Assembly: GCF_006345805.1 (NCBI RefSeq)
Contig: NC_043009.1
Location: forward strand, 15,438,001 to 15,502,000
From: Octopus sinensis
Taxonomy: Eukaryota
Reading direction: 5' to 3'
DNA: 64,000 bases
In this document: positions 7,755 through 64,000 of the stretch, in pieces
Layout of the letters: every line of letters starts with the position of its first letter
Position numbering within the stretch: the first letter of the stretch is position 1
Made by a program: the position numbers and the translations under genes
The notes under the pieces: generated by a model
Seen by the model: the letters and a program-made list of their open reading frames with translations, nothing else
Told to the model about the DNA's origin: nothing
The model's database searches: none

Positions 7755-8094
7755 ACCTCTATCTCTTTTTCTCTATATAGAAAAAAATACGTGAGACACA
7801 TAGAAAGGGGTTTAGGGACAAAAATCAAGTGAGACGCAGGACCTCTGCATTCTCTCTTTCTATATGTCCCTCTCTATGTCTCTATCTCCCTCTCTCTCCT
7901 TCTCTCTGGTTGCTTATGTGTGTTTCTCTCTCACTACTTCTATCTCTTTTTCTCTCTAGAGGAAAAAGGATTGTGGAGTGGTACACGTATGTTTGTGACT
8001 GAACTACAGCCTTGCATTATCGAAGTGTTTTGCATTATCAAAGGAAAAGACAGAAATACAGAAAAAGGGAAAAGTTCCTAGCTATTTGAAGACT

Positions 8095-8495
8095 ATACTC
8101 TTTACTCTCTCTTTTACTTGTTTCAGTCATTTGACTGCGGCCATACTGGAGCACCGCCTTTAGTCGAGCAAATCGACCCCAGGACTTATTCTTTATAAGC
8201 CCAGTACTTATTCTATCGGTCTCTTTTGCCGAACCGCTAAGTGACGGGGACGTAAACACACCAGCATCGGTTGTCAAGCAATGCTAGGGGGACAAACACA
8301 GACACACAAACACACACATACATATACATATATATACATATATATACATATATACGACAGGCTTCTTTCAGTTTCCGTCTACCAAATCCACTCACAAGGC
8401 ATTATTCGGCCCGGGGCTATAGCAGAAGACACTTGCCCAAGATGCCACGCAGTGGAACTGAACCCGGAACCATGTGGTTGGTAAAGAAGCTACTT
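8095..8495 (-). mobile_element. tRNA-derived SINE family 1 (Octopus OR/CORE-like): B-box, body and tail, head split by the Tx1 LINE
   Basis: Minus strand reads aagtagcttctttaccaaccacatggttccgggttcagttcc (B box) cttgggcaagtgtctt..., internal (TA/CA) tract, and tail ...gtcaaatgactgaaacaagtaaaagagagtaaagagta. Matches the intact copy at 16179. Confidence 0.9.
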
Positions 8496-8723
8496 TATTT
8501 CATAAAATTTGCCATTTAGGCATTTACAAAGAGGGGACAAACAAGGACAGACAAATATAAAGTGTGAAGTAGCTTAACACAGTTACAATTTTCGAATGAA
8601 ATTACGGATAAGATTATAAACAATGAATTTTACGAAGGCAATGTTTAAAAATATTAATGATCATGTCGAAGGACGGACACCCAGCCATTCGGGTAGAACC
8701 TTTACTTTCTGATCCGGTCACAC

Positions 8724-11018
8724 TTACCTGGTGCCAAACATACCCATCTTGTATGCCACAGGCTTCCATCTTTTCACAAACATATCTCGTGACAGACACC
8801 TCTTCTCCAGCCTGATTTTGCTACTGAGGTGGTAACTAAAAAAATTAATCAACCCCTGGCCGGAGACAAAGGTGCCTGTCACTATACCTTTCGTACGCGT
8901 CTTCCATACTGTTTCTTTCAGTATGGCTACTACACAGAAAAAACAAGCCTTTCTTTCCCTGTTAAGGAAAGGGGGCGGCACAATCTCGATGATAGACTCA
9001 GCTGATAGCTGTACTCTTCCCATCACTGACAACAGTTGTTCAACAAAAGCTATCAGTCCCGATAACTCCGGACACTCCACGAATGCGTGCAAGACGGTCT
9101 CCCTATCCTGCTCACATCGCGGGCATGTCGGCGAGACGGCACTACCGTGCCTTGACAGCTTGTCGCGAACAGGTAAAGCCGCACGGAAACACTGCCAGGC
9201 CAGGGATTTCTGGTAATTATCCAGATACCCCGGCCCGAACGTCCTCCGGAACAGGTTGACCAACTGATTTTCATCGTAGCCCAGGGTCTCCCCCAAGGCG
9301 TCTTCGGACTTAATCTCCACTAACCCGCTATAGAAATCCGTGGTGGAACTCCTGTTGCCGGCGTTGCCCACCCGAGATAGTAGCTGGAGCGCCTGGCGGC
9401 ACTCCAAATGCCATTCACTCAGTTTAGGTCTCCGCTTGATCCATGCACCGATGTCCGTTAGGGATGTTAACTGGGGAAGGTAGAACCGGACGTGCGGTGA
9501 CCACACCTGCTCTCCATCCAGGTAAAGCCAGAGGTGCCTCAACCTTAACGCGAGTTTTCGCATCCTCAGCCAAGGCATCCCTAGCCCACCCTTTAGCGGT
9601 TTCTGGCAGCAGACAGAGCGCTTTACAAGTGGCTTTCCTCCTTTCCACAAAAATCGGAAAAGGATTCTCTCCAACTTGTTCAGCCACAAATCGGGGCAAG
9701 GCACCACGGTCAGACGGTAGGTGATTACTGATGCTATAAACATCTGCACCACCTCTGCCTTCCCTAGCAGGAATAACGCCCGCCCAGACCAGGTCTGGGT
9801 TAGAGCGGTTACCTTGTTGGCCACCTCACTCCAATTTTTCTCAATCTGGAGGTCTGGCCCGAACCAGACTCCGAGCAGCTTAACAGGACCTTCCGTCCAA
9901 CGCCCTACGACGTTATTGGACGGCATCGGCTTGCCCCTCCAGGTGCCGAGTTGCAAACCGACCGACTTGTCCTTGTTAACCTTTGCTCCTGCCACCGCCT
10001 CGTAGCTTTTGATGGCCTCTTCCACCACTGGAAGCTGGCCTTCGTCTGCCACGATGATGGAGGTGTCATACGCATACGCCGTAGCTCCTCTTCCACACCA
10101 TAGATCATGCGGCGCGCCCCCTAGTGCCTCCAACTTCCGCAGCAAAGGCTCAAGAGCCAATACGTATAGGAGCGAGGACAGGGGACACCCTTGACGAACT
10201 GAACGCTCGATCCTGAACGGCTTCGAAAAGGAACCGTTCACCTTGACTACAGACTCGATGTCGCTATACAAAGCAGCGATCCAGCCTCGAAAGGTCGGGC
10301 CTAGGCCAGCCTCTTCGAGGACCGCCGCCAGGTACCGATGGTCGACCCTATCAAATGCTTTGGACTGGTCTAAATGTACCAGTGCTCCCCCTGCGCCAGA
10401 AAGCTTCCCCACCCTCTCTAAGGAGTAGCGTATAAGGTGGAGATTGTCGTGGATCGTTCTGCCGGGGATAGCGCACGTTTGCGCTTCCCCGACAAGTTTG
10501 TCCACGACCCGCGCCAACCTTTTTGCTAGCACCTTGGCCAGAATCTTTAACTCTGTGTTTAACAGAGTTATGGGCCTGAAGTTCCCTATCTCGTCCCCCT
10601 TGTTCGGGTCCTTCCTGATCAACGTCACCGCCCCCCGGCTCGCAGACTTGGGAATTCTCCCATTCTGCTGCCAGTTGGCGTAGACGCTAGCCAGCAGGTG
10701 CCCGAACAAGTCTGGCATACTTCTATAAAATTCATAGGGCAGACCATCGAGACCCGGCGACTTCTCCCCGGGGCACTTGCCCAACACCTCGATTACTTCC
10801 TCGGCTGTGATTGGCCCTTCACAGCACTCAGCCTCTCGTGTCGAGAGGCGCGGGCCACCAGACAGGAAGTCCCTAAGGGCCTCACCATGATCCAGCGTCC
10901 CGCACCTCCCGAACAACTCGGCGAAGTGCTTGTGAAGTGCCTCACACATCTCGTCCCGCTTTTTGATCGTGCATCCGTTTTCATCAACAAGAGACCCAAT
11001 TGTGGCATCGTTTCCACG
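8724..11018 (-). pseudogene. Tx1 ORF2 reverse transcriptase and C-terminal Cys/His domain (catalytic motif mutated)
   Basis: Motifs KSPGLDGL, NFRPITLLN, LDQSKAFDRV, VRQGCPLS, AYAYD (expected YADD), CPRC..ETVLHAFVEC. The 23 codons 11018-10950 (RGNDATIGSLVDENGCTIKKRDE) link it in frame to the endonuclease. Confidence 0.95.
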
Positions 11019-12125
11019 CTATGTTTCTATCGTACGGGCCCATCCGGCAACATTAATACCCTCACGGCCCAATGCTCGTACTTTAGCCCGGACTCTACAT
11101 CCCTCATGTTTGGTTTTGAGGTGACGGTCTAATGCCGTTCTCGCCGCTAAAATGTGAGATGCAGAGCCCAACCTCAACGCCTCCTCTAAGTTCTTAACTA
11201 GTTGCCCTTCTATTCTAGCCCTATCTAGTCTTAGTTGTTTACTAAATCTAATGGACTCGAATCGAATGGCTCTTTTGAGGGTGAACCACCACCGGTTATT
11301 AACCACGGCTCCGGTTAACGCCCTCTGCACTAACACCTTAATCCGGCTACGGTATGCCTCGCGTGTCAAAATAGACTTGTTCAGCTTCCAGTAGCCGGTT
11401 CCTATCTTAAGTGTGCTATCTATGTCCAGTCTACACGTGACCATTCTATGGTCAGTATAGGGCACCTGGACGAGCTGTGGACAACTAAAACTAGACTTAT
11501 CTCTAGTTCTTATCACTATCCTGTCTAGGTAAGACTTGAACCTTCCGTCGCCACTCATCCAGGTCCACTCTGGGACGTTCGGATGGTCAAGTCTGTAACG
11601 ATCTGCCAGCTGAAACCGCTTAAGCAGATCCACGAGACGTGAGTTCACTTTCCTATAGATCGAGCCAACGCTATCGATGTGTACGTCAACGATAGCATTA
11701 AAGTCCCCTAATATCACTAAAGTCTTCGACGTCACGAGAAAGCCCTCTAGGCGCCGATAAAAATCAGTTTGGAAGCCTCTAACACAAGGTGCATAGAGTC
11801 CGATCAACCTGAAGGCCTTACTGCTGTATGTCACATCAAGGACGACCAGCCCACCTTCTGGGTCTACATAGACTGTACTTGTCTGTAGAGCCAAGTCTTT
11901 ACGGATCAGTACCACTACGCCCCCTCGTCCCCCGGTCTGGCCAGGAGACATGATTTTCTCGTAGCCATTCAGGAGAGGCGAGAAGGTTTGTAGGCTGTCC
12001 AGCTTGGTCTCTGTAGCAACCATCACATGTATATTATGTGATCTGAGGTCGTCGAGGAAACAAGCCTGCTTCCACTTCGAACTCAGACCACGCACATTTA
12101 AACAACCAAGGTTAAGCGAAGCCAT
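11019..12125 (-). CDS. Tx1 ORF2 N-terminal part: apurinic-like (APE) endonuclease
   Basis: Motifs GCLNVRGL, ATETK, IGLYAP, LGDFNA, SYLDRI, YTDHRMV, GTGYWKLN. Terminated by a TAG at 11019-11021 that is in frame with the RT ORF below. Confidence 0.93.
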   Translation of the reverse strand: MASLNLGCLNVRGLSSKWKQACFLDDLRSHNIHVMVATETKLDSLQTFSPLLNGYEKIMSPGQTGGRGGVVVLIRKDLALQTSTVYVDPEGGLVVLDVTYSSKAFRLIGLYAPCVRGFQTDFYRRLEGFLVTSKTLVILGDFNAIVDVHIDSVGSIYRKVNSRLVDLLKRFQLADRYRLDHPNVPEWTWMSGDGRFKSYLDRIVIRTRDKSSFSCPQLVQVPYTDHRMVTCRLDIDSTLKIGTGYWKLNKSILTREAYRSRIKVLVQRALTGAVVNNRWWFTLKRAIRFESIRFSKQLRLDRARIEGQLVKNLEEALRLGSASHILAARTALDRHLKTKHEGCRVRAKVRALGREGINVAGWARTIET

Positions 12126-12142
12126 TACAAAAAGTAAAAGTT

Positions 12143-13548
12143 CTACTTACGTTTCGTTGGAGAGGTGGGGGCCGACCTCGCCACACGTTTGTGGGCCCCT
12201 TCTTTCTCCTCTTTCTTCAGATAGTCCGGCAAGTTCGCGATATGCCGGATGGCGTTTGGGTGTCTGTCTTTTAATTGTTTGAACGTTGTTTCCGCAATCC
12301 ACGCGTGTCTATTTCGATCTTTGTATTTGTTGTACAGTCTTGCTGACTGATGCTGAACCACAATATCGTTTATGTATTTGTCTTGTGTGTCAAATTCAAT
12401 TAATATGAGTTCATTTTCTTTTTTGTCTTCTTTTTCTGGGCCAGTTGAGCGGGATGTTTTTTTCCGTGTCTGTGGTGTGTCTTTGTTTTTATTATTTTTT
12501 GTAGGGGATTTGGACGGGGATGCTGCACGAATTCTTTTACGAACTGGTGTAAATCCCCCCTCTGATACCTCCATGGTATCGTCTGGGGTGGCAATGGCTT
12601 GTTCGGTAGGCGCCGCAGTTTTTAGGGGGGTGGGAGGTTTTAATAGTGTAGGGGTTTGTGAGTGCGAGGGCTGGGTTTTTTCTTCAGTCTGTTTTGGGGT
12701 TGGCACCGTAATAGCGGGAGTGGGATTTTTTGTTTTTGTAGGGGTAGGTGTGTTTGCCAGGGTAGGAACTTCTTTATTATCTGAGGGGCCTGGTGTCTGC
12801 GGTTTCTTTTGCTTGTCTGGACAGTCTACACGAATGTGGCCCTTTTTGCCGCAGGCGTAACAGGTGGGTTTTCGGCCTTCGACCTGTACCCTGAGGGCTA
12901 CGTTCTCGCCCACGAGCACCCTCTCAGGAAGGAGCTGTAGGTCCTCCGCTGTTCCTTGAATTAATATATTAATGTTACGCCCGAGCCAAAATCGAGGGGT
13001 AGAGCATGTTACTTCTAGTATTTTTATTTTGTCCGCCCTTTTATATAATAGGGCGGCCACTACCTCTACCGGATCAACTTCCGGCGGGGCTTCTACAATC
13101 CTGACCCGGGACGTCCTGCGTCCCCTATAGCTTGGAAAAAGTACCACCTCCTTGGTTTTTAGGGGGTTTACAGAATGCCCGCAGGCCATTTCTTCCCCCG
13201 AGAAGCGGACATCCACTGTGCCATATGCCCGTCCCCTGGCGACGTACACGATGTCCTTCCAAATCGGGGACAGGCATTTCTCGATGGTACTTTTTTTCCA
13301 AAGTGTTTGAACCTTCTGCTTTGTGGACAGAAAGTTTAAAACACTACGGTCCGCTTCTCGGTCTCCACGATACTGGCGGAGGGTGATATTTTAACATCAC
13401 CACCCTCCTCTTGCATTTTTTTAAATAGCTCGACGAGCTGATTGACAACGATGTCAATTTTCTCGGTAGCCACTGCGGCTACCTCAGAAAATTTTTTAAC
13501 ATTGCTCTCCTCAAGAGCACTACTTTAGTGAATAATTTCAACAGACAT
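12143..13548 (-). pseudogene. Tx1 ORF1 (gag-like RNA-binding protein with zinc knuckle); N-terminus disrupted
   Basis: Track ORF 12143..13249 contains CYACGKKGHIRVDC (CX2CX4HX4C) followed by a Pro/Thr/Lys-rich tail. A probable original ATG lies at 13546-13548 (MSVEIIH*SSALEESNVKKF...EKRTVVF*), with two in-frame TAA and an inferred frameshift near the A-run at 13291-13297. Confidence 0.85.
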
Positions 13549-13934
13549 TATTCTGTTGAAATTAGACAACACAAAAATTACGAGTATTGGTTTCCCACAA
13601 AACTGGGAAACCTATAGAAAGTTTTTCTTCCAAAGTAGTTCAAAACAGCAGTTCAAAAATTCCAATTCCCACCCCCATTCGGGGGAGGGGCACGAAAATA
13701 GTCTGGCAGGACTATGTATAGTCACGTAAATAAAAAGCCACAGTGGCTAACAGTTCAACGGTAAGAAATTATTCAATTATTTCCCGGTAAAACCGGAGAA
13801 CAAGACTGTTCAGCAACGTTTAAAGGCAAATTTTCAGTAGTAGGAATTCAACAATTAACAACACAGCAAAACTCTTACCGGGAAGAAAACGCGTCCACAC
13901 CGTAGTACGGTAAGCAAAGTCACTCTTCTGTCAG

Positions 13935-13975
13935 TGTGGTTAGCAAAGCTACTTACCACACAGCCACTCCTGCAC
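13935..13975 (-). mobile_element. SINE family 1 5' head (A-box half) on the far side of the Tx1 LINE
   Basis: Minus strand reads gtgcaggagtggctgtgtggtaagtagctt, the A-box segment missing from the 8095-8495 copy. Confidence 0.85.
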
Positions 13976-14329
13976 TATGGAAATAATTACAAAAGATTTT
14001 ATTAAATTTTTCTTTCAGTTTAATAGTTTCACTTCATAATTACTAACTACCTTTGCTTTATTCTTAGTTGAAAAAGTCGAAAGGACTCAAACAGGGACTA
14101 ACCGTCGCAAAATTTATTTCATGATCTAATTATTTTGGGCATTTTCTACCTTGTCTTAATTTCCCTATACATACTAACTCGTGTTTGTACGTATATCATT
14201 ATTATTGTTGTTGTTTTCGTCGTTGATGTTGTATATTTTTCCCTTGCTCTGTAAATGTTGTTCTTGTTATTATTATCATTGGTATTACTAAGACTGCAAG
14301 CTGGCAGAATCAACAGCAGGATGGAGAAT

Positions 14330-14500
14330 ATGCTTAGCGCCATTCATCCGTCTTTGTTCATCCGTTCTCCAAGATCGACTTTACTGTTCATCCTTTCGTG
14401 GCCTGCCAAATATGTACCAGTTGAGCACTGGGGACAAGGTAAGCGATAACCCTCCTCCCCGGAAATTCAGGCCGTGCACCTATCATGAAAAAGAAGATCA
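14330..14500 (+). mobile_element. Degenerate SINE family 2 fragment
   Basis: atgcttagcg...gatcgactttactgttcatcctttcg...gtaccagttgagcactgggac...ccctcctcccccggaaattcaggccgtgcacc resembles the array body and the unit-3 tail. Confidence 0.55.
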
Positions 14501-16092
14501 TTATTATATTTTTCCTTCTTATTTATATTGTCTGACGAAAACAGACACTATTTCTAGCTATTTCGTTTTTATTAACTAATATATACACATTCTCGAATGG
14601 TTACTATATCTATGTCCCCCGATGAATGAGAGATCCTGAAAGTTACTAAATAACAGAATACACATATTTCAACGCTCACTATTATATAGCAAAAGTACTA
14701 TTTATCATCGTATTTTATGGCTGTTTCGATAATTTCGATGACCATAAAATGAAAGCGTTCTGATATTGGTAAAAAAAAGTATTTGTTTTTTATATATAGA
14801 TATATAACGACTAATCAAAATTGAAAAATATGCGATCGAACACAGACAAATAAATATACTCACGCATATCACACGCATACACGTGCACATACACACACAT
14901 ACACACATGCATGTACGTATGTATATATGTATTCATACACACACATACATGATATATTAAAGTACAAAATGTAGCTTCCCATAGTGCAAAAAATAAAACT
15001 GTTGTTGTTAGAAAAGTGTGTGGTAAGAATGAGTGAGAAAGACGTGCATATGAGGACTAAATACAGGTACAAACTCAGACACATTCACACACATACAAAC
15101 ACTTTTAGAACATGTAAACACACACAGGTCGATATATGTACATGTGTGAGAGAATGATCTATACATGTAAGGTATGGACGTGTTTAGCGGTTGTTTCTCT
15201 TTCTATCTTTCTTTGTGCCTCACTATTTATCCAGTGGTTCGACCAATGTATCATGAAGTAATTTATTGTAGTGTAGATTTAACATTTATCTATCGAATTA
15301 TCTATATATATTATAAACATTTGTCTTCCTGTGTTTATAAATGTGACACCTTATGTTGTATAAGGCATTTTTTCAGCTATCTATATATGCTAGTTGCCAT
15401 ATTCCTGCCTTTTCATGTAAATTCTAGATGACGCTATGTCCTAAGGATGCATGTTTTGCAACTATCTATATATAATTTCTTCGGAAAAGATATGTAGTCC
15501 TATGGCCTAGATGCGGACTATTCAATCTATATAATATCAAGTGCTTCTCGAATTTACTTATCCTAAAATAGGAATGCGGTGTGCTCCGGCAGGCAATGCC
15601 CATAGACCCTGACATCGAAAATCGAATCTACACAAATAGAGAAAATACAAGGAAAGATTGTGGAAAGTGTAAAGAGGGGAAAAAGGATTAGGCATAAAGA
15701 AAGGAAAAATGACAAACGATAATGAGGGTAAAATGAAATTACTGCAAAATTTCGTGATGCATTGTGTGGTATGACAAACGAGAAAGATGGCGATAATAGG
15801 GAAAGAAAGGGTGTTTTCAAGGAAAAAGAAAGCAAAATATGAACAACGGTGATAGGTAATATCTTACACAAACCAGAATGATAAATCTGGTTAAAGAGTA
15901 TACTTAAGATTTCCTAGGTAAATCAAAGGATTATAGAAGAAATAAATGGCCTGATATTATTAACAGAGTGGAGGGGTGATTATGGGGGGCCTTGTATCAG
16001 AAAATGGGCGTTCAATTTTCTCTTGCACGTACACTAAATATGTGTATGTAACTACACACTTGCAGTTGGTGATGTTTTTTCTTTCTTTGGAC

Positions 16093-16178: not shown

Positions 16179-16368
16179 AGGCGCGGGAGTGTCTGTGTGG
16201 TAAGTAGCTTGCTTATGAACTACATGGTTCCGGGTTCAGTCCCACTGCGTGGCAACTTGGGTGAATGTCTTCTACTATAGCCTCGGGCCGACCAAAGCCT
16301 TGTGAGTGGATTTGGTAGACGGAAACTGAAAGAAGCCTGTCGTATGTATGTATGTATATTGTCGTATG

Positions 16369-16423
<55 letters not shown>

Positions 16424-16662
16424 TTGTGTGTCTGTGTTTGTCCCCCTAGCATTGCTTGACAACCGATGCTGTTGTGTTTACGTCCTCGTCACCTAGCGGT
16501 TCGGCAAAAAGAGACCGATAGAATAAGTACTGTGCTTACAAAGAATAAGTCCCGGGGTCGATTTGCTCGACTAAAGGTGGTGCTCCAGCATGGCCGCAGT
16601 CAAATGACTGAAACAAGTCATAGTAATAGTAAAAGTAATAGTAAATAGTAATAGTAAAGTAA
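16179..16662 (+). mobile_element. tRNA-derived SINE family 1, full length
   Basis: A-box-like gtgtctgtgtggtaagtagc, B-box ggttcagtccc, CORE-like cttgggtgaatgtctt, internal (TA)n, conserved 3' body cacctagcggttcggcaaaaagagaccgatagaataagtac, tail of agtaa repeats. Confidence 0.92.
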
Positions 16663-21700: not shown

Positions 21701-21738
21701 TAAGATACGTATTTTTTCCCATTTTTTATTTTATTCCT

Positions 21739-21965
21739 TTATTTGTTTCAGTCATTTCAATGCGGCTATGCTGAAGTTTCACCTTCAGTCGAAGAAATAG
21801 ACCCAAGGACTTATTCTTTGTAAACCAAGTACTTATTTTATCGGTTCTGTTTAGCCGTATTTCTAAGTTACGGGGACATAAACACACCTTTATTTGTTGT
21901 CAAGTGATGGTGGGGGGACAAACACAGACACATAAACATATACATATACATATACATATACATAC

Positions 21966-22046
<81 letters not shown>

Positions 22047-22203
22047 CGACGGGCTTCTTTCAGTTTCCGCCTACCAAATCCACTCATAAGTCTTCGGACC
22101 GCTCAAGGCTATAGAAGAAGACACTGCTCAAGGTGCCACGGAGTAGGACTGAACCCGGAACCATGTGGTTGGTAAGCAAGCTACTTACAACCACACAGCC
22201 ACT
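21739..22203 (-). mobile_element. tRNA-derived SINE family 1, full length
   Basis: Reverse complement of the 16179 copy, with head catgtggttggtaagcaagctactt...ccacacagccact and ~115 bp internal (TA)n. Confidence 0.9.
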
Positions 22204-23015: not shown

Positions 23016-23139
23016 CACGTTCTTTAAACATCAGGAAAGAGACTCTATGTAACTATATTTATGTAAACTCTTGTCAGTTTACGTATGTAAATCACGGCAA
23101 TGAGCTGTCAAAATCTTTACCATACCGGAATATTGCTTA

Positions 23140-23310
23140 GCAGCATTTCTCGTGACCTTACATCCTGATTTCAAATGACTCCACATTCGATTTTGCTTTT
23201 TATATTTTAGGAGTCGATAAAATAAGTACCTGTTGAATACTGTGGTTTATGTGATCATCCTATTCCTTCCCCTAAAACTGCTGGCCTTAAGCCAAAATTT
23301 GAAAAAAAAG
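23140..23310 (+). mobile_element. Degenerate SINE family 2 fragment
   Basis: ttcgattttgctttt..ttaggagtcgataaaataagtacctgttgaatactg...ccttcccctaaaactgctggcctt. Confidence 0.55.
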
Positions 23311-24670
23311 TGTATGTATATATGAGATGGTGTGGATGTGTGACCAGCTACGAATACTATTTGCTAATTTTATTCATATAGCTACTTCATAGCATTTTAC
23401 TTATGCTGATAGCTTCTTAAGATGTGACTTTCGTGTTTCAAAATTAAGTAGCTATTTGAAAACCATTTTCCCTTACAAAATATCATTTACATGAACGCAT
23501 CAGAAAAACAGTTTCAATTTATGTTCTTATAATTACATTTAGCTCTTAAATACCATTTCCCATACCAAACTTTTTCTGCAATAATGATTCTATTAGATAA
23601 CATAGATTTTTCTATTTGTGATACTTCCGGTCTAATTTTTTATTGGTCTGTTAGCATTAAACATTTAAATTTGTTCACTTTTTTGTATATAGATTTTCGT
23701 TTTAAATCGACTTTCAATTATGTGTGCGTATGTGTGTGTGTATGCACATATATTTATCTGATGATATATAGCCGTATCATAAACTACCTCAAATCTTACA
23801 TTGAATATATATGTTGCTTTCACTATTATATGCGACCTCTCGTCTTTCAACATCTGTATTAGGCTCGTTAGGTTTACACGTATTAGACATTTTGATGTCA
23901 ATGATCCACAAATATCTGTCGAGATAACATGCAAGTATTTTCTGAACCATGGGCCTTGTATGTAGTAATCGCTGGCAATTCATGTCAGCGGATGGCATTG
24001 AATATTGTTTAAACCAAAAAACGTCGAAATGGGTATTAGTAAACTTATGACTATTTATATGTCGTCTTCTACTGACAATTTCATTTGCATTTTTATATCC
24101 CAAGTTTTTTGCCGCCTCTTTTAGTGACTATTCCGGAGTCATCATCAGCTCTGGATACTATAAAATGTAGATTCTCTTGTACTTCTGACATTTAATAGTA
24201 TCACAATCTTCCAGTTTAATGGAATCACATCTATACATAAAATATTTGTGGAATATAGAGGGTTTCCCTTCGATTTCTTTAATCTTTTATCAATGCAAGC
24301 TGGATAGTTCTTCATTCTCACGAGAGGTAATTAGGAGTTCCTCACCGATAAGCTGTATGTCATTTTATTCTTATTTGATCCTTTCATTAATGCGTTTCTG
24401 AACAGTTGCCTGAGCTATAATATAAGGACCCCAAAACGCCTTTGCGCCGAAGCACAGCGCACGTATTTTTTTTTGCGTGTGTATATGCATAAATGAATAT
24501 ATGAATATATGTATGTTTGTCGGTTCTTTTTTGAGTACTTTTGCCAATGAAGGAGATGGTTTACAACAAAGAAACAAAGTTCCGTCGTGAAATTTTGGAG
24601 AAAAGGATAGGGCGTTATATACTTCGAGCAATAGAAAGGAATTGCATTTACTATTATTGTTACAGTTTCT

Positions 24671-25285
24671 AAGGCGGTGAGCTGGCAGAAACGTGAGCAC
24701 GCCGGGCGAAATGCTTAGCGGTATGTCGTCTGCCGTTACGTTCTGAGTTCAAATTCGGCTGGGGTCGACTTTGCCTTTCATCCTTTCGGGGTCGATAAAT
24801 TTAGTACTAGTTGCGCACCGAGGCCGATGTAATCGGCTTAATCCCATTGTCTGTTCTTGTTTGTTCCCTCTATGTTTAGCCCCTTGTGGGCAATAAAGAA
24901 ATAAGAAACGTTAGCACGCCGGGTGAACTTCTTAACGATATTTCGTCTGCCGCTACGTTCTGAGTTCAAATTCCGCCGAGGTCGACTTTGCCTTTCATCC
25001 TTTCGGGGTCGATAAATTAAGTACAAGTTACGCAATGGGGTCGATGTAATCGACTTAATACGTTTATCTGTCCCTGTTTCTCCCCTCTGCGTTTATCGTC
25101 TTGTGGGTAGTAAAGAAATATGTATTTCATCTGTCTTTATGTTCTGAGTTCAAATTCCACCGTGGTCGACTATGCCTTTCAACGTTTCGGGGTCGATAAA
25201 TTAAGTACCAGTTGCGTACTTGTGTCGATCTAAACAACTGGCCCTTCCCCAAAAAAATTTTGGGTCTTATGCCTAGAGAAGAAAA
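24671..25285 (+). mobile_element. tRNA-derived SINE family 2, head-to-tail array of three units
   Basis: Unit 1 24671-24903 (aaggcggtgagctggcagaaacg..., B-box gagttcaaattc), unit 2 24904-25120, unit 3 25121-25285. All share ggtcgac(t)ttgcctttca..tttcggggtcgataaatt(a)agtac. Confidence 0.9.
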
Positions 25286-26152
25286 TATTATAATCACAGT
25301 TTCTAGTAACATAATGGACATAAGCTGGACTTGATTTGCCTAAAAAGATTATCCAGAGTGTCATTCGAGATATATTAACTTAAACAGGTGTACGAACAAT
25401 TACTGGTATAAACGTGAATTTATTATCAGTGAAGCGTTGAAAACCTATGTTTATTCTCCACTGATTTTGGAATATACACCCACATTTATAACGAAATATT
25501 TTCATGGTAACACTTTTGGGAAAGCTGCTGATCCCGTGTCATATCTAAGAGTAAGGGATATAAGTGAGATTTTGTTTCATTTCACCTTCATGGGTTTTAG
25601 TGTTTCATTCATATTTCTTTATTGGGCATATTATAGCTATACACGTTTCTTCGGTTATTAAAACATACTTTTCAAGATGGTACGATGTATGTGATCACGA
25701 ATTCAAGAGGCGTTACCCCTTATATTATCAGCATGCCAAATATTTCTGGAAATGTACGTGCTCATACCATTTGTGAGGTGTATATCGTGTTTCGTATTCA
25801 GATTTGTTAGTCATCCAATTCTACGTTCACACAGGCAGTTCTTTTAAGAGAATTCCTCTTGAATAGTTCACTGCAACTGAGGGAGATGGTAAGCTCTTCA
25901 ATTTCCGCGCATTTAAGTTTAATGCATTTATTGAGAAGATATGGCATTAACAAGCTTTCTACTAAGGTCTTGACTTCAAGTAATTATATACATACTCTGA
26001 ATATTTTTCTACCTGGAGTTGGGTACCAATTTTTATATCCGTCTATAGTTGTTGTGTAGGCATTTCAATTTTAAACCGACATGGTGTCTTGCCATTTAAG
26101 CACCTCATTCAGCTAAATTTTAATATTTTATTCATATATATATTCATATATA

Positions 26153-47150: not shown

Positions 47151-47951
47151 GCACAGATGCTAACCTCAAACACAGTCACGTAAATACAATTCAAAGAGAC
47201 AATGCAATGGAAAAGACCTTCGTGGACAGAAAATTCACGTAATTTATTTCTCCATTGTAGCTATAAAAACATAATAAAATTTTCATGGCAAAACATGTCA
47301 TTTAAATTTTTCATTTTAATATTCACCTCGTAGAGTGTGATTAAAATCACACACGTAAAATTAGTGCTAAATTTGGATAAACTTATTTCGAACTCGAATG
47401 CTCATGTGTGAATATTAATGCTCGAAAAGATGCTTCCGATTAATTTGAATGTTCTCGATGGGCATTTTAATTTGAATGATGCAAATGCTAAATTCTTTGA
47501 CCGAAGTGCAGAAATTGAATAATCCAAAAGCGAATTTGGGTCACTAACCTCATGGCGCTAAATTATTTTCGTGATTTTCAATGATCTGATTACAAATTGA
47601 ATAACAAACGAATGAAACTGACTGCAAAACCCTATATTTTCACTCTAGTGACACAGCTGTATCTTACTGTAATCATTGAATCACCTTCAGAGCATGAAAT
47701 AAATTTATTAAATGTAATGTAGTCTGCTTATTATGTGTTCATCTAAATATATACTCATTTATTCATTTACGTGTTTCAGTCATTTGACTGCAGTCATACT
47801 GGAGCAGCGCCTTTAGTTGGACGAATCAACACCAGGTTTTATTCTTTGTAAGACTAGTACTTATTCTATCGTCTCTTTTGCCGAACCGCTAGTTCACTGG
47901 GATGTAAACACCCCAATATCGGTTGTCAAGCAAAGGTGGGAGACAGCACTG

Positions 47952-47990
<39 letters not shown>

Positions 47991-55189: not shown

Positions 55190-57400
55190 GGACACACCAC
55201 CCACACACACCCACCCACCTACATCCCACACGCACACACCCACCCACCTACCTCCCACACCCACACGCCTGTTCACACACACATACGTAGACCCATCTAC
55301 GTACATACATTCACACATTTAATCACACACACTTACAGACATACTAACACACACTAACATACAAACCAACATGCACATACACACACACATACATACATAC
55401 GCACACACATACATACTTAGACACACACACACACACACAGACATACATACACACATACACACACACATACATACGCACATACATACACACACACTCACAC
55501 ACACACACCGCACGTACATACTTCACACACACACATGCAAACATACATGTAGGCACATACATACATACATACCTACACATGCACACCCTTACACTGAATG
55601 CACACACACATACACCTTTTTGCATCCAGGCAGCCCCCCCTCTTTTCTGCTTTCCGGTTTTGGCTGATGGATCCTCGGTTCCCGCGTAGCGGGGCGTTCG
55701 AGGGCGTTTGCGCTCGCGCTGGGGGCTTGGTCGGCCTTGGCGCGCGCTGGGGGCTTGGTCGGCCCCTTGGGCTTGCGTTGTACTGCTTGTGCGTTGTGTG
55801 CGTGGGCGCGCTTCGTGTATGTGGGATGCTTCGGATGTGCGCGTGCGTATGTATGCATACATACCCACACACTCGCATGCATCCCTACCCACATACATAC
55901 ACGCACACCTACTCACACACACACATACACACACATACCTGCACACACACGCACACATACATACATACACATACATACCTACTTCAGACATACACACACA
56001 CAGACATACACCCATACACTCACACTCACACGCATACACACACACACATACACACGCACACGTACACATACACACACACACACACACCTACATACATACA
56101 TTACACTTGTATACACACACACTTACATTCATACACACACACACCTACACAGCCATACCCTCACTCAGACACACACATCTACCTACTCACACACACAAAC
56201 ACACATGGACACACACCCATACATACATACATCTACACACACACGCCTACACACATACATACACACATACATAAACACACACTCATACACATATACACAC
56301 ATACGCACACACACATATACTTATACACATGCACACACACACATACATACATACACCCATATACATACACACACACACATACCCACATACTCCTATACGC
56401 ACATACATACACACAGACATACACACATACACACTCACACAAACATACACACACACATACTTACACACACACTCACCTGCACGCGCACACACATGCATGA
56501 CAAACACCCATACACTCACACTCACATACGCACACACCAACATAAACACGCACACGCACACGCACACACACACATACACTCCCACACACATACACACGCA
56601 CCTACATACACACACGCACGCATACACACGCAAACACACATACATTACACACGTACACACACACCTACATACACATGCATACACACACACACACACAAAC
56701 ATGCACGGACACACCCAGACATACACACATACACCTATATACACACGCCCACACACCTACATACACACACATATACACACGCCCACACACCTACATACAC
56801 ACACATACATACACACACATACACGGACACACCCATACATACTTACATACATACACCTATACACACACGCCTACACACCTACATACACACACATGCATAC
56901 ACACACACACATATACGCACACACACACACATATACGCACATACATATATACCCACAAACATGCACACACACACACACATACGCACATGCATGCATGCAT
57001 GCATGCACACGCGCACACCTACACGCATACACACACACACACGCACGTACACATACATACATACACACACGCATACATACACCCATACACATACATGCAT
57101 CCTACACACACATACATACACACTCACACATACATACACACACACACACTCACTCACACACTTGTATGTACGCGCACACACATGCACATACACACACTTC
57201 CCCACACCCACACGTACATACATACACACTCACACACATACACACACACATACACACGCACACGTACACATACACACACACATACATACTCACATACATT
57301 CATCGGACACACTGCCACCCGGACATACACACAGACACACTCACACATCCACACACATACATACTTACGCACATACTCGCAGGCTCGCGCACGCACGCGC
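55190..57400. repeat. ~2.2-kb degenerate CA/CATA-rich simple repeat with GC-rich inserts
   Basis: Mixed (CA)n/(CATA)n/(CACG)n; source of the spurious 685-aa, 429-aa and 300-aa HT-rich ORFs. Confidence 0.95.
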
Positions 57401-58105
57401 TTGCGCCGGTTCGCGTACGCATACGCTCCGCAGGCACCTCGCTCTTGGAACCGACAAGACCTCCCGCCCGTTCCTGGGACCGTCGCGTGTCGTTGGGTTT
57501 TCCCACGCCCGCCTCCGCGGGACCACTCTTCCATCTTCCCCTCAGCTGGAGTCCTTTTTCCTTAACCCCCCCCCTTTTTCGTTACACACGCGCGCACACA
57601 TATACACACATTGCTTAAATATATACATTACTCTTACACACATTCAATCTACTCGCCATTTATACCAACACGACACTGGACACACACACACACTACTACT
57701 CAACACACGCTGGCACGCTACTTACGCCCCCACCCCTTCCCCTCCCTCCCTTCCTCCTTCCTTCTTTTTCTTACTACTGACCTTTGTCTGCTAAGCTGAC
57801 CACTAGTCTCGCCCTACCTCACACGCCTACACACAGACGCACACACTAACACACACATATATATTTTTTTGTTTTTTCATCTCGCCTCACACACACACAT
57901 ACACACACGCACACACTCACACATACACACACATCTGTTGCGTTACCAACCTTGTCTCCACTCTTTTGCCTTTAAAAACCCACTTTGCTCTGTTTTCGTA
58001 AACATCCGCCTTTCACCATGTGCAACTCGTAAACACCAGTCGTCTTTTTTCTCTTTCCCTGTTGCCCGCTCTGGGATCTTTCTTTCCTCTCTCTTCCTTC
58101 TTTAT

Positions 58106-63912: not shown

Positions 63913-64000
63913 ATACATACTTTAAATTAAAGCGTTGAGTTAATACATATCGTAACATGAATATAATCTTGTCTAATCTAGGCACAAGTCCCAAAACTTC

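What the first reader, a model, noticed from the sequence alone, without database searches (positions are those of the whole stretch)
24847..24903. SINE family 2 array units end in the 3' terminus of the Tx1 LINE
Seen: the Tx1 3' end (sense) ttgtctgtccttgtttgtcccctctttgt (8526-8554, minus) matches ttgtctgttcttgtttgttccctctatgt (24847-24875) at 26/29 nt. Both then run through ggcaa to the same terminal gaaata (8496; 24903). Unit 2 carries a decayed version (25063-25120). Established: SINE-LINE 3'-tail sharing marks the partner LINE in stringent clades (RTE, L2, CR1), whereas L1-group elements are usually poly(A)-dependent. Inference: this SINE subfamily is mobilised by the Tx1 machinery through a specific tail, linking it to the targeting seen above.
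Basis: partly seen in the sequence, partly recalled or inferred. Interest (0 to 1): 0.75.

Follow-up and report, generated by a model that had tools for sequence, protein, structure and literature searches.

The report
Octopod SINE tail copied from LINE
The last ~60 bases of a short cephalopod repeat (SINE) are the same module that ends an L1/Tx1-like LINE family, so the SINE very likely borrows that LINE's machinery to copy itself. This is a textbook kind of partnership seen here in an unusual LINE group.

Summary
The 29-mer matches at 26/29 (3 window hits, 0 expected), and both elements end in GAAATA.

The window's LINE is a single copy, so I checked relatives. Their 3' ends carry the SINE tail, at the very terminus 222-273 nt past the ORF2 stop in the ORF-linked copies. 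They come from Argonauta hians, JGI and ENA metagenomes and Logan read assemblies. An Argonauta LINE matches the window SINE tail at 51/66 (z=12.4, 0/2000 shuffles).

The tail holds a small hairpin, usually with loop CUUGU, whose 4-bp stem co-varies between LINEs and SINEs. It is followed by AAUAAAGAAAU and, in terminal copies, (ATT)n.

In 28 kb of Argonauta DNA at least 20 copies of this tail end two different SINE families and four LINE 3' ends. So the tail belongs to the LINE, and SINEs acquired it.

- Tx1 membership is untested. The best solved-structure match is human L1 ORF2p.
- The proposed link to targeting is not supported. The SINE array lies in unique DNA.
- The three-unit array is flanked by a single duplication, ACAGTTTCTA, and its third unit carries a variant tail.

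Verdict: a stringent-type SINE/LINE pair, a new member of a known kind. I found no report of it in the searchable literature.

The parts
24840..24903 (+). LINE-derived 3' tail module of SINE-2 unit 1 (type a): AATCCCATTGTCTGTTCTTGTTTGTTCCCTCTATGTTTAGCCCCTTGTGGGCAATAAAGAAATA
   Evidence: Local alignments to LINE 3' termini: L032 51/66 (z=12.4), L003 46/61 (z=9.9), window LINE 26/29 (z=9.1), all 0/2000 shuffles. The module boundary coincides with the point where the type-a and type-b SINE-2 units diverge.
24879..24891 (+). Apical hairpin of the tail: GCCC-CTTGT-GGGC
   Evidence: The stem co-varies across 23 LINE and SINE tails: 82.6% paired against 67% in shuffles (0/500) and 16-50% when the partner is slid. 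It is predicted in every single-sequence fold.
25057..25120 (+). Decayed type-a tail of SINE-2 unit 2, ending GTCTTGTGGGTAGTAAAGAAATA
24673..25295 (+). Head-to-tail SINE-2 trimer. Unit 1 is 24673-24903 (full length). Unit 2 is 24904-25120 (5'-truncated by about 14 nt). Unit 3 is 25121-25295 (5'-truncated by about 40 nt) and has the variant type-b tail GGCCCTTCCCCAAAAAAATTTTGGGTCTTATGCCTAGAGAAGAAAATATTATAATC.
   Evidence: Self-BLAST, sequence, flanks.
24662..24671 (+). Upstream copy of the target-site duplication ACAGTTTCTA flanking the whole trimer
   Evidence: Exact 10-mer repeated at 25296-25305.
25296..25305 (+). Downstream copy of the target-site duplication ACAGTTTCTA
8496..8570 (-). 3' tail of the LINE: the 29-mer (8526-8554), the hairpin TGCC-TAAAT-GGCA (8510-8522) and the terminal TTTTATGAAATA
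   Evidence: It folds as a 12-bp terminal stem-loop (-7.9 kcal/mol). The stem pair T-A replaces the G-C/G-U pair of relatives.
8496..13934 (-). Nearly intact L1-superclade LINE (5.4 kb). ORF1 is 12143-13249 (zf-CCHC). ORF2 is 8724-12125 (APE + RT + zf-RVT, 1133 codons with one in-frame stop at codon 369). The 3'UTR is 228 nt.
   Evidence: Pfam, PDB best hit human L1 ORF2p at E=3e-47, reading frame, boundaries.
8473..8495 (-). 3' copy of the imperfect duplication of the SINE-1 head (AAGTAGCTTCTTTACCAACCACA) flanking the LINE. The 5' copy is at 13935-13954 (AAGTAGCTTTGCTAACCACA).
   Evidence: Comparison with intact SINE-1 heads at 16183 and 22190.
14290..14507 (+). Older SINE-2-type (Deu-like) copy with a type-b tail ...CCCTCCTCCCCGGAAATTCAGGCCGTGCACCTATCATGAAAAAGAAGATCATTATTA
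   Evidence: Its terminal AAAAGAAGATCATTATTA resembles the L003 LINE terminus AAAAGAAATCATTATTA.
23134..23310 (+). Divergent SINE-2-type copy whose tail has the hairpin GGC-CTTAA-GCC followed by AAAATTTGAAAAAAAAG
   Evidence: It resembles the tail of the distant LINE relatives L005/L006 (AGGCCTTGTGCCAAATTTG).
63979..63992 (-). Type-b tail hairpin (GGGACTTGTGCCTA) of a SINE cut by the window end

Best explanation
SINE family 2 is a modular SINE of about 230 bp. It has a Pol III-type head with a B-box-like GAGTTCAAATTCC. It has a Deu/Nin-DC-like central domain (...GCCTTTCATCCTTTCGGGGTCGATAAATTAAGTAC...). Its last ~62 nt were copied from the 3' terminus of an L1-superclade (probably L1-Tx1-type) LINE family of octopods.

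That terminus is a recognition module of the stringent type. It holds a short terminal stem-loop with a 4-bp apical stem and, in most copies, a CUUGU loop. An outer A/U-rich stem is formed by UCUAUGUUU and AAUAAAGA. The module ends in GAAAU(A/C), followed in terminal copies by (ATT)n.

Shown here: the sequence homology, its terminal position in independent LINE copies, and covariation in the apical stem. Also shown: the same tail on several SINE families, and target-site duplications.

Inferred: the LINE ORF2 protein (APE + RT) binds this tail on SINE RNA and starts target-primed reverse transcription at its end, so the SINEs are mobilised in trans.

The three-unit array in the window is flanked by one duplication. 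It arose either by end-to-end template jumping of the reverse transcriptase between SINE RNAs, or by successive insertions into the terminal repeat of a resident copy.

The window's own LINE copy is a diverged subfamily. The true partner of SINE-2a is more likely an Octopus relative of the Argonauta L032 or JGI L003 type.
For: (1) The match is far beyond chance.
(2) Other LINE 3' ends carry the tail at their very terminus. L032 from Argonauta runs ORF2, then 222 nt, then ...GTCCCCTCTATGTTTTTGCCCTTGTGGCTAATAAAAGAAATA(ATT)4. L003 (JGI) ends ...GGGCCCTTGTGGCCAATAAAAGAAATC(ATT)n. L028/L029 (Logan), L023 (ENA), L002 from Argonauta and two 5'-truncated LINE 3'UTR fragments also carry it. 3'UTR lengths are 222-273 nt in the four copies (window included) with both the ORF2 stop and the terminus in hand.
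(3) LINE-specific 3'UTR sequence (TGTAAACCCC...) runs straight into the tail, and no SINE body lies upstream of it.
(4) Relatives only 44% identical in protein (L005/L006) still end in C-rich sequence, then AGGCCTTGTGCC, then A/T-rich sequence.
(5) Hairpin covariation gives the stem variants GCCC/GGGC, GGCC/GGCC, AACC/GGTT, GACC/GGTC, AGCC/GGCT, TGCC/GGCA and GGC/GCC. Cells are 82.6% paired against 67% in shuffles (0/500); the covariation score is 0.52 against 0.25. All six single folds give a terminal stem-loop.
(6) In 28 kb of Argonauta DNA at least 20 copies of the tail end a Deu-type SINE, a short tRNA-like SINE and LINE fragments.
(7) All six SINE-2-type copies in the window end in a variant of this tail.
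(8) Duplications flank the window array (10 bp) and the Argonauta SINEs (10-13 bp), as expected for target-primed reverse transcription.
Against: There is no functional test. Only one copy of the window's LINE subfamily is available, and its last 30 nt resemble the SINE tail mainly in fold, not in sequence. The apical stem is only 4 bp. The outer stem shows almost no covariation, and RNAalifold predicts only the apical stem. Folding energies are not unusual (z from -2.15 to +1.03). The 5' part of the 29-mer is T/G-rich, and its 11-nt core recurs inside SINE-1. The sequences are related, so the shuffle controls overstate significance. No Octopus genome could be searched, so copy numbers, the ages of SINE and LINE subfamilies, and the exact partner are unknown.
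Confidence: 0.8

Rival explanations
1. The tail belongs to the SINE. The window's LINE merely carries a 5'-truncated SINE-2 fragment, or a template-switch chimera, at its 3' end.
For: Only one copy of this LINE subfamily is available. The similarity to the SINE begins abruptly 59 nt from the end. Head-to-tail chimeras clearly form in this system.
Against: Six further LINE 3' ends from other species and sources carry the tail; where the ORF2 stop is in hand it ends 222-273 nt past that stop, and LINE-specific 3'UTR sequence is contiguous with it. The window LINE's terminal 30 nt differ from the SINE yet keep the hairpin through compensatory changes (TGCC/GGCA). A decaying SINE fragment would not do that. 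Distant LINE relatives also have the motif.
Confidence: 0.05
2. The resemblance is chance or low-complexity similarity between T/G-rich and A-rich sequences.
For: The 29-mer is T/G-rich. Its core TGTTTGTCCCC also occurs in three SINE-1 copies beside a (TG)n tract. The exact 20-nt tail pattern also hits bacterial genomes by chance.
Against: No shuffle in 2000 reached the observed score for six LINE/SINE tail pairs (z = 5.7-12.4), and none in 100 for the pattern. Similarity spans 50-66 nt, including the non-repetitive hairpin. It always lies at the element terminus, and the stem co-varies.
Confidence: 0.02
3. The tail is LINE-derived, but it is a relic. Present-day SINE-2 copies are mobilised by a different LINE abundant in octopus (RTE, CR1 or Dong-R4), or through the terminal (ATT)n/A-rich end alone without recognition of the stem-loop.
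For: No functional data. Published octopus work names an RTE element as the transcribed full-length LINE (PMC9115989). Folding energies of the tail are unremarkable. Terminal simple repeats can matter on their own in other LINEs (PMC3747384).
Against: Different SINE families and tail variants (types a, b, c) each track a variant seen in LINE relatives, including compensatory stem changes. That implies continuing selection on the module in both partners. The L1-Tx1 class has recently active families in O. vulgaris (PMC13282606).
Confidence: 0.12

Closest known systems
UnaSINE1 / UnaL2 of the eel and other stringent-type SINE/LINE pairs (L2, CR1, RTE clades; Kajikawa & Okada 2002; reviewed in PMC3747384)
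   Same: About 60 nt of 3' sequence is shared between a SINE and a LINE. There is a terminal stem-loop followed by a short simple repeat, and several SINE families use one LINE tail.
   Different: The LINE here belongs to the L1 superclade, not L2, CR1 or RTE. The terminal repeat is (ATT)n. Nothing has been tested experimentally.
ZmSINE2/ZmSINE3 with LINE1-1_ZM (maize/sorghum) and SINEX-3_CR with L1-1_CR (Chlamydomonas): the L1-clade tail-sharing pairs listed by Ohshima (PMC3472496, PMC3747384)
   Same: An L1-clade LINE with a conserved 3' stem-loop whose stem nucleotides vary while the loop and flanks are conserved, shared with tRNA-type SINEs.
   Different: Those pairs are in plants and a green alga, and their ends are poly(A) or (T)n. 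This would be an animal (mollusc) example ending in GAAAT(ATT)n.
SINEU and Tx1-Mar in crocodilians (Kojima 2015, PMC4494074)
   Same: A SINE proposed to be mobilised by a Tx1-clade LINE.
   Different: The evidence there is a shared insertion target (Mariner-N4_AMi) and shared snRNA-derived 5' heads. Here it is a shared 3' tail, and no shared target was found.
DeuSINE / Nin-DC superfamily (RepeatMasker class tRNA-Deu, reported as a main octopus SINE class in PMC8967140)
   Same: The SINE-2 body carries a conserved central domain. I found that domain word-for-word in unrelated non-cephalopod SINEs from metagenomes.
   Different: The superfamily is defined by the central domain, and its tails differ between hosts. 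The L1/Tx1-type tail described here is the lineage-specific module.
End-to-end template jumping by non-LTR reverse transcriptases (R2; U6/L1 chimeras), cited from my own knowledge
   Same: Head-to-tail chimeras of separate RNAs within a single duplication, with downstream units 5'-truncated.
   Different: This is not distinguishable here from repeated insertion into the terminal repeat of a resident copy.

Membership tests
Stringent-type SINE/LINE tail-sharing pair | The 3' end of the SINE is homologous to the 3' end of a LINE in the same lineage | tested here: met
   z = 7.5-12.4, 0/2000 shuffles against five LINE termini (z = 5.7 for a sixth, L028), with identities up to 51/66. Alignment.
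Stringent-type SINE/LINE tail-sharing pair | The tail is an intrinsic, conserved terminus of the LINE family and not a secondary insertion | tested here: met
   Six further LINE 3' ends from Argonauta, JGI, ENA and Logan carry it. The 3'UTR is 222-273 nt in the four ORF-linked copies (window included), with the tail terminal. Only one copy of the window's own subfamily was available.
Stringent-type SINE/LINE tail-sharing pair | A conserved stem-loop in the shared tail | tested here: inconclusive
   The apical 4-bp stem co-varies. The outer stem is 79% paired but nearly invariant. RNAalifold keeps only the apical stem, and fold z-scores are unremarkable.
Stringent-type SINE/LINE tail-sharing pair | SINE retrotransposition depends on the cognate LINE protein and on the tail | not testable with these tools
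   This needs a retrotransposition assay.
SINE (Pol III, tRNA-derived) | Short, multicopy and flanked by target-site duplications | tested here: met
   Units of 175-231 bp, six copies in 64 kb and many in Argonauta. Duplications of 10-13 bp.
SINE (Pol III, tRNA-derived) | Head derived from tRNA with A and B boxes | tested here: inconclusive
   A B-box-like GAGTTCAAATTCC is present. ARAGORN and Rfam find no tRNA similarity, even at E up to 10.
L1 superclade of non-LTR retrotransposons | ORF1 plus an ORF2 with an N-terminal APE endonuclease and an RT closest to L1 | tested here: met
   Pfam finds Exo_endo_phos, RVT_1, zf-RVT and an ORF1 zf-CCHC. The best solved-structure hit is human L1 ORF2p at 3e-47, against R2 at 1e-20.
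Tx1 clade | RT-domain phylogeny places the element with Tx1 references (the RTclass1 criterion) | not tested
   No Tx1 reference sequences were available in the tools. The only indirect support is that L1-Tx1 is the only L1-like class named in the two octopus repeat surveys read (PMC13282606 Table 1, PMC8967140).
Tx1 clade | Sequence-specific insertion, typical of many Tx1 families | tested here: inconclusive
   The window LINE sits in a SINE-1 head (a single case). The distant relatives L005/L006 are in a head-to-tail array with similar flanks. The SINE copies have varied flanks.
DeuSINE / Nin-DC superfamily | The conserved central domain | tested here: met
   The 20-mer GGGGTCGATAAATTWAGTAC with flanking CTCAGCCTTTCATCC occurs in 14 non-cephalopod metagenome SINE copies that have other heads and tails. 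The name of the domain rests on my recollection and on the published class tRNA-Deu (PMC8967140).

The most novel reading that the evidence does not exclude
The large octopod SINE expansion (the tRNA-Deu class and at least one further SINE family) was driven by an L1/Tx1-superclade LINE. That LINE recognises a specific terminal stem-loop of about 35 nt plus (ATT)n, not poly(A). This would be the first stringent-type SINE/LINE partnership of the L1 superclade described in animals. Its reverse transcriptase would often build head-to-tail SINE and LINE arrays, by end-to-end template jumping or by targeting its own tail repeat.
Probability: 0.4. Interest if true: 0.6.

Novelty: new member of a known kind. 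Interest (0 to 1): 0.45.

Why it matters
SINEs are one of the largest components of octopus genomes: 11.6% of the O. vulgaris genome (PMC13282606) and about 40% of its transposable-element content (PMC8967140). They have been discussed in connection with cephalopod genome and brain evolution. None of the papers I could search names their autonomous partner. The one LINE singled out as transcribed in octopus brain is an RTE element (PMC9115989).

Tying the Deu-type SINEs to an L1-Tx1-like LINE through a defined RNA module gives a concrete hypothesis that can be tested. It says which LINE subfamilies must be active for SINE bursts to occur.

It would also add an animal case to Ohshima's argument that L1-clade elements were ancestrally stringent (PMC3472496). 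The co-varying hairpin is a ready target for mutagenesis.

Tried and rejected
- A protein-pattern scan of JGI metagenome contigs with an ORF2 alignment found no confirmed relatives.
- A scan of metagenome contigs for the SINE-2 core returned 14 SINE copies, all from non-cephalopod hosts with other tails. These helped only to show that the core is a widespread domain.
- A scan of bacterial and archaeal genome contigs for the 20-nt tail pattern gave 8 hits, all chance matches inside bacterial genes.
- ARAGORN and Rfam gave nothing for the SINE head.
- Cluster names gave no clade label for the LINE relatives.
- L001, L004, L021, L022 and L024-L027 end before the LINE tail or are frameshifted, so they were uninformative.
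- I considered the (ATT)n after L003 as a microsatellite target, as for the Tx1-group elements Kibi and Koshi. I prefer it as the element's own terminal repeat, because it also follows the Argonauta LINE ends and the type-b SINE tails in unrelated flanks.
- Chance similarity is rejected.
- A SINE fragment inserted in the LINE 3'UTR is rejected, because the tail sits at the terminus of independent LINE copies.
- Albertin et al. 2015 could not be read.

Full report
**Observation.**
- On the minus strand, 8554-8526 reads TTGTCTGTCCTTGTTTGTCCCCTCTTTGT. On the plus strand, 24847-24875 reads TTGTCTGTTCTTGTTTGTTCCCTCTATGT. They match at 26/29.
- Both run on through a GGCA(A) motif to a terminal GAAATA, ending at 8496 and 24903.
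- A 25-nt core with up to three mismatches occurs only at these two places and in the decayed unit-2 copy (25064-25088). None is expected by chance.
- The local alignment score is 9 standard deviations above dinucleotide shuffles.
- One caveat: the 11-mer TGTTTGTCCCC inside the match also sits in three copies of the other SINE family beside a (TG)n tract. The T/G-rich half is therefore the weaker part of the evidence.

**What the two elements are.**
- The minus-strand element at 8496-13934 is a 5.4-kb LINE.
- Its ORF1 carries a zinc knuckle. Its ORF2 has 1133 codons with an APE endonuclease, a reverse transcriptase and a zf-RVT domain. One in-frame stop at codon 369 interrupts ORF2.
- Its best match among solved structures is human L1 ORF2p (3e-47, against 1e-20 for R2). 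It therefore belongs to the L1 superclade.
- I could not test the Tx1 label, because no Tx1 reference was available. L1-Tx1 is the only L1-like class named in the octopus repeat surveys I read (PMC13282606 Table 1, PMC8967140). That is consistent with Tx1 but is not a test.
- The LINE lies inside the head of a CORE-type SINE-1, between two imperfect copies of AAGTAGCTT...ACCACA of about 20-23 bp. This fixes its 3' end at GAAATA with no poly(A).
- SINE family 2 has three parts. The head contains a B-box-like motif, but Rfam and ARAGORN detect no tRNA similarity.
- The central domain recurs word-for-word in SINEs of unrelated hosts. I take it to be the Deu/Nin-DC domain, matching the published class tRNA-Deu.
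- The third part is the ~62-nt tail at issue.

It could not be answered from the window, which holds only one LINE.
- The closest ORF2 relatives in the protein collection are only 57-69% identical. I fetched the DNA of those whose contigs extend past the stop codon.
- L032 from Argonauta hians runs from ORF2 through 222 nt of 3'UTR to ...AACCCCATGTCTCTGTATCGTCCCCTCTATGTTTTTGCCCTTGTGGCTAATAAAAGAAATA, followed by (ATT)4.
- This matches the window's SINE-2 unit 1 tail at 51/66 over the whole module (z=12.4, 0/2000).
- L003 (JGI) ends ...GGGCCCTTGTGGCCAATAAAAGAAATC(ATT)n.
- L028/L029 (Logan) read ...AACCCTTGTGGTTTGAATAAA at the contig end. L023 (ENA) reads ...CTCTTGTGGCCAAT.
- A second Argonauta LINE (L002) ends ...CAGCCAGGTGGCTAAGAAAGAAAT. 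Two 5'-truncated LINE 3'UTR fragments in the Argonauta loci end the same way.
- In the four ORF-linked copies, window included, the 3'UTR is 222-273 nt and the tail is terminal. LINE-specific sequence runs straight into it.
- Relatives at 44% protein identity (L005/L006, unknown host) still end in a C-rich run, then AGGCCTTGTGCC, then A/T-rich sequence.
- The tail is therefore a conserved terminus of this LINE group, not a SINE fragment lodged in one LINE.

**Structure.**
- Near the end lies a small hairpin whose stem changes while pairing is kept. The variants are GCCC/GGGC (window SINE), GGCC/GGCC (L003), AACC/GGTT (L028), GACC/GGTC (an L032 fragment), AGCC/GGCT (L002), TGCC/GGCA (window LINE) and GGC/GCC (type-b tails and L005).
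- Over 23 LINE and SINE tails, 82.6% of cells pair. Shuffled partners give 67% (0/500) and slid partners give 16-50%. Three of the four pairs show double changes.
- Each of six single sequences folds its last ~35 nt into a longer stem-loop.
- That outer stem is nearly invariant, so covariation does not support it. RNAalifold keeps only the apical stem, and the folding energies are ordinary.
- I therefore treat the apical hairpin as supported and the extended stem as plausible.
- The window LINE's last 30 nt differ in sequence from the SINE but keep the fold. This argues that it is a functional diverged variant, not a decayed SINE piece.

**Breadth.**
- All six SINE-2-type copies in the window end in a variant of this tail. 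Type a is on units 1 and 2.
- Type b reads CCCCAAAAATTTTGGGTCTTATGCCTAGAGAAGAAAATATTATAATC. It is on unit 3 and at 14469 and 63992.
- A third variant is at 23283.
- The 28 kb of Argonauta DNA fetched holds at least 20 copies of the tail. They end a Deu-type SINE homologous to SINE-2, a short tRNA-like SINE, and LINE fragments.
- Several SINE families sharing one LINE tail, in two octopod lineages, is what the known stringent SINE/LINE partnerships look like.

**The array.**
- The three units are not three separate insertions with their own duplications.
- One exact 10-bp duplication, ACAGTTTCTA, flanks the whole trimer (24662-24671 and 25296-25305).
- Unit 1 is full length. Units 2 and 3 are 5'-truncated by about 14 and 40 nt. 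Each starts directly after the GAAATA of the previous unit. Unit 3 has the type-b tail.
- Two explanations fit. The reverse transcriptase may have jumped from the 5' region of one SINE RNA to the exact 3' end of another. Or later copies may have inserted into the terminal repeat of a resident copy.
- Similar head-to-tail runs occur in Argonauta: a LINE fragment with (ATT)26 followed by three SINE units. They also occur in the distant LINE relatives, with two copies 6,596 bp apart.
- One locus cannot decide between the two explanations.

**Targeting.**
I found no support for this.
- The LINE is in a SINE-1 head. The SINE array is in unique sequence, and the Argonauta SINE copies have varied A/T-rich flanks with duplications of 10-13 bp.

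**Comparison with what is known.**
- Tail sharing between SINEs and LINEs is well established, and was proven experimentally for eel UnaSINE1/UnaL2.
- Ohshima's survey lists 58 pairs. The only L1-clade pairs in it are maize/sorghum ZmSINE2/3 with LINE1-1_ZM and Chlamydomonas SINEX-3_CR with L1-1_CR (PMC3747384).
- For Tx1, the one proposed SINE partnership I found is crocodilian SINEU. It rests on shared targets and shared heads, not on tails (PMC4494074).
- The octopus repeat papers I could read classify the SINEs as tRNA-Core and tRNA-Deu and report L1-Tx1 families, some recently active. None names a partner LINE.
- I could not read Albertin et al. 2015 or Repbase, so an earlier description cannot be excluded.

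**Verdict.**
- The core inference, a LINE-derived tail that most likely serves trans-mobilisation, is well supported by comparative evidence (confidence about 0.8).
- The Tx1 label is untested, and the link to targeting is not supported.
- This is a new member of a known kind. It is of moderate interest because it names a candidate driver for the octopod SINE expansion and would be an animal example of stringent recognition within the L1 superclade.

Noticed in passing
window 8473-8495 and 13935-13954 (minus strand): The LINE interrupts the head of a CORE-type SINE-1. It lies between two imperfect copies of about 20-23 bp (AAGTAGCTTCTTTACCAACCACA and AAGTAGCTTTGCTAACCACA). The two copies differ by several changes although the LINE's reading frames are almost intact. 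It is unclear whether this is a long duplication that later mutated or two different SINE-1 copies.
   Followed up: partly
window 8092-8495 (-), 16183-16642 (+), 21735-22190 (-), 47758-47988 (-): SINE-1 is a composite. A CORE-like 5' half is followed by an internal (TA)n(TG)n microsatellite. A second half then starts with TGTTTGTCCCCC and carries its own Deu-like segment (GAGACCGATAGAATAAGTAC). The arrangement recurs in every copy, as if one SINE had been fixed inside the tail repeat of another.
   Followed up: no
window 8724-12125 (minus strand): ORF2 of the LINE is a single 1133-codon frame with only one in-frame stop (codon 369). This copy is therefore young and nearly intact.
   Followed up: yes
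L005 and L006 (ENA ERZ21867824, contig ctg122906l, 358689-373746): Two full-length copies of a LINE 44% identical in ORF2 lie head to tail, 6,596 bp apart on one contig, with similar sequence after each 3' end (...CGACAACCC). This suggests tandem arrays or site-specific insertion. The host organism is unknown.
   Followed up: partly
L032 4600-5360 (Argonauta hians): A nested cluster made of a Deu-type SINE tail, a 5'-truncated LINE 3'UTR ending in (ATT)26, and three head-to-tail copies of a short tRNA-like SINE. Every member ends in the same tail.
   Followed up: partly
L007-L020 (JGI metagenome contigs): SINEs from non-cephalopod hosts share the 35-nt central domain of SINE-2 but have other heads and tails. 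Some end in (ATT)n (L009, L016) and others in (TTAC)n (L010, L012, L014, L015, L020).
   Followed up: no
P0040 / P0146 (MCP3653585.1, WP_288064025.1, labelled Herbaspirillum sp. MAG): A protein annotated in a bacterial metagenome-assembled genome is 56% identical to this cephalopod LINE ORF2 C-terminus. It is almost certainly eukaryotic contamination of the bin.
   Followed up: no
window 55344-57800: Long overlapping open frames on both strands, up to 685 aa, with no Pfam match. They lie within an internally repetitive stretch (56219-57376). This is probably low-complexity or satellite sequence, not a gene.
   Followed up: no
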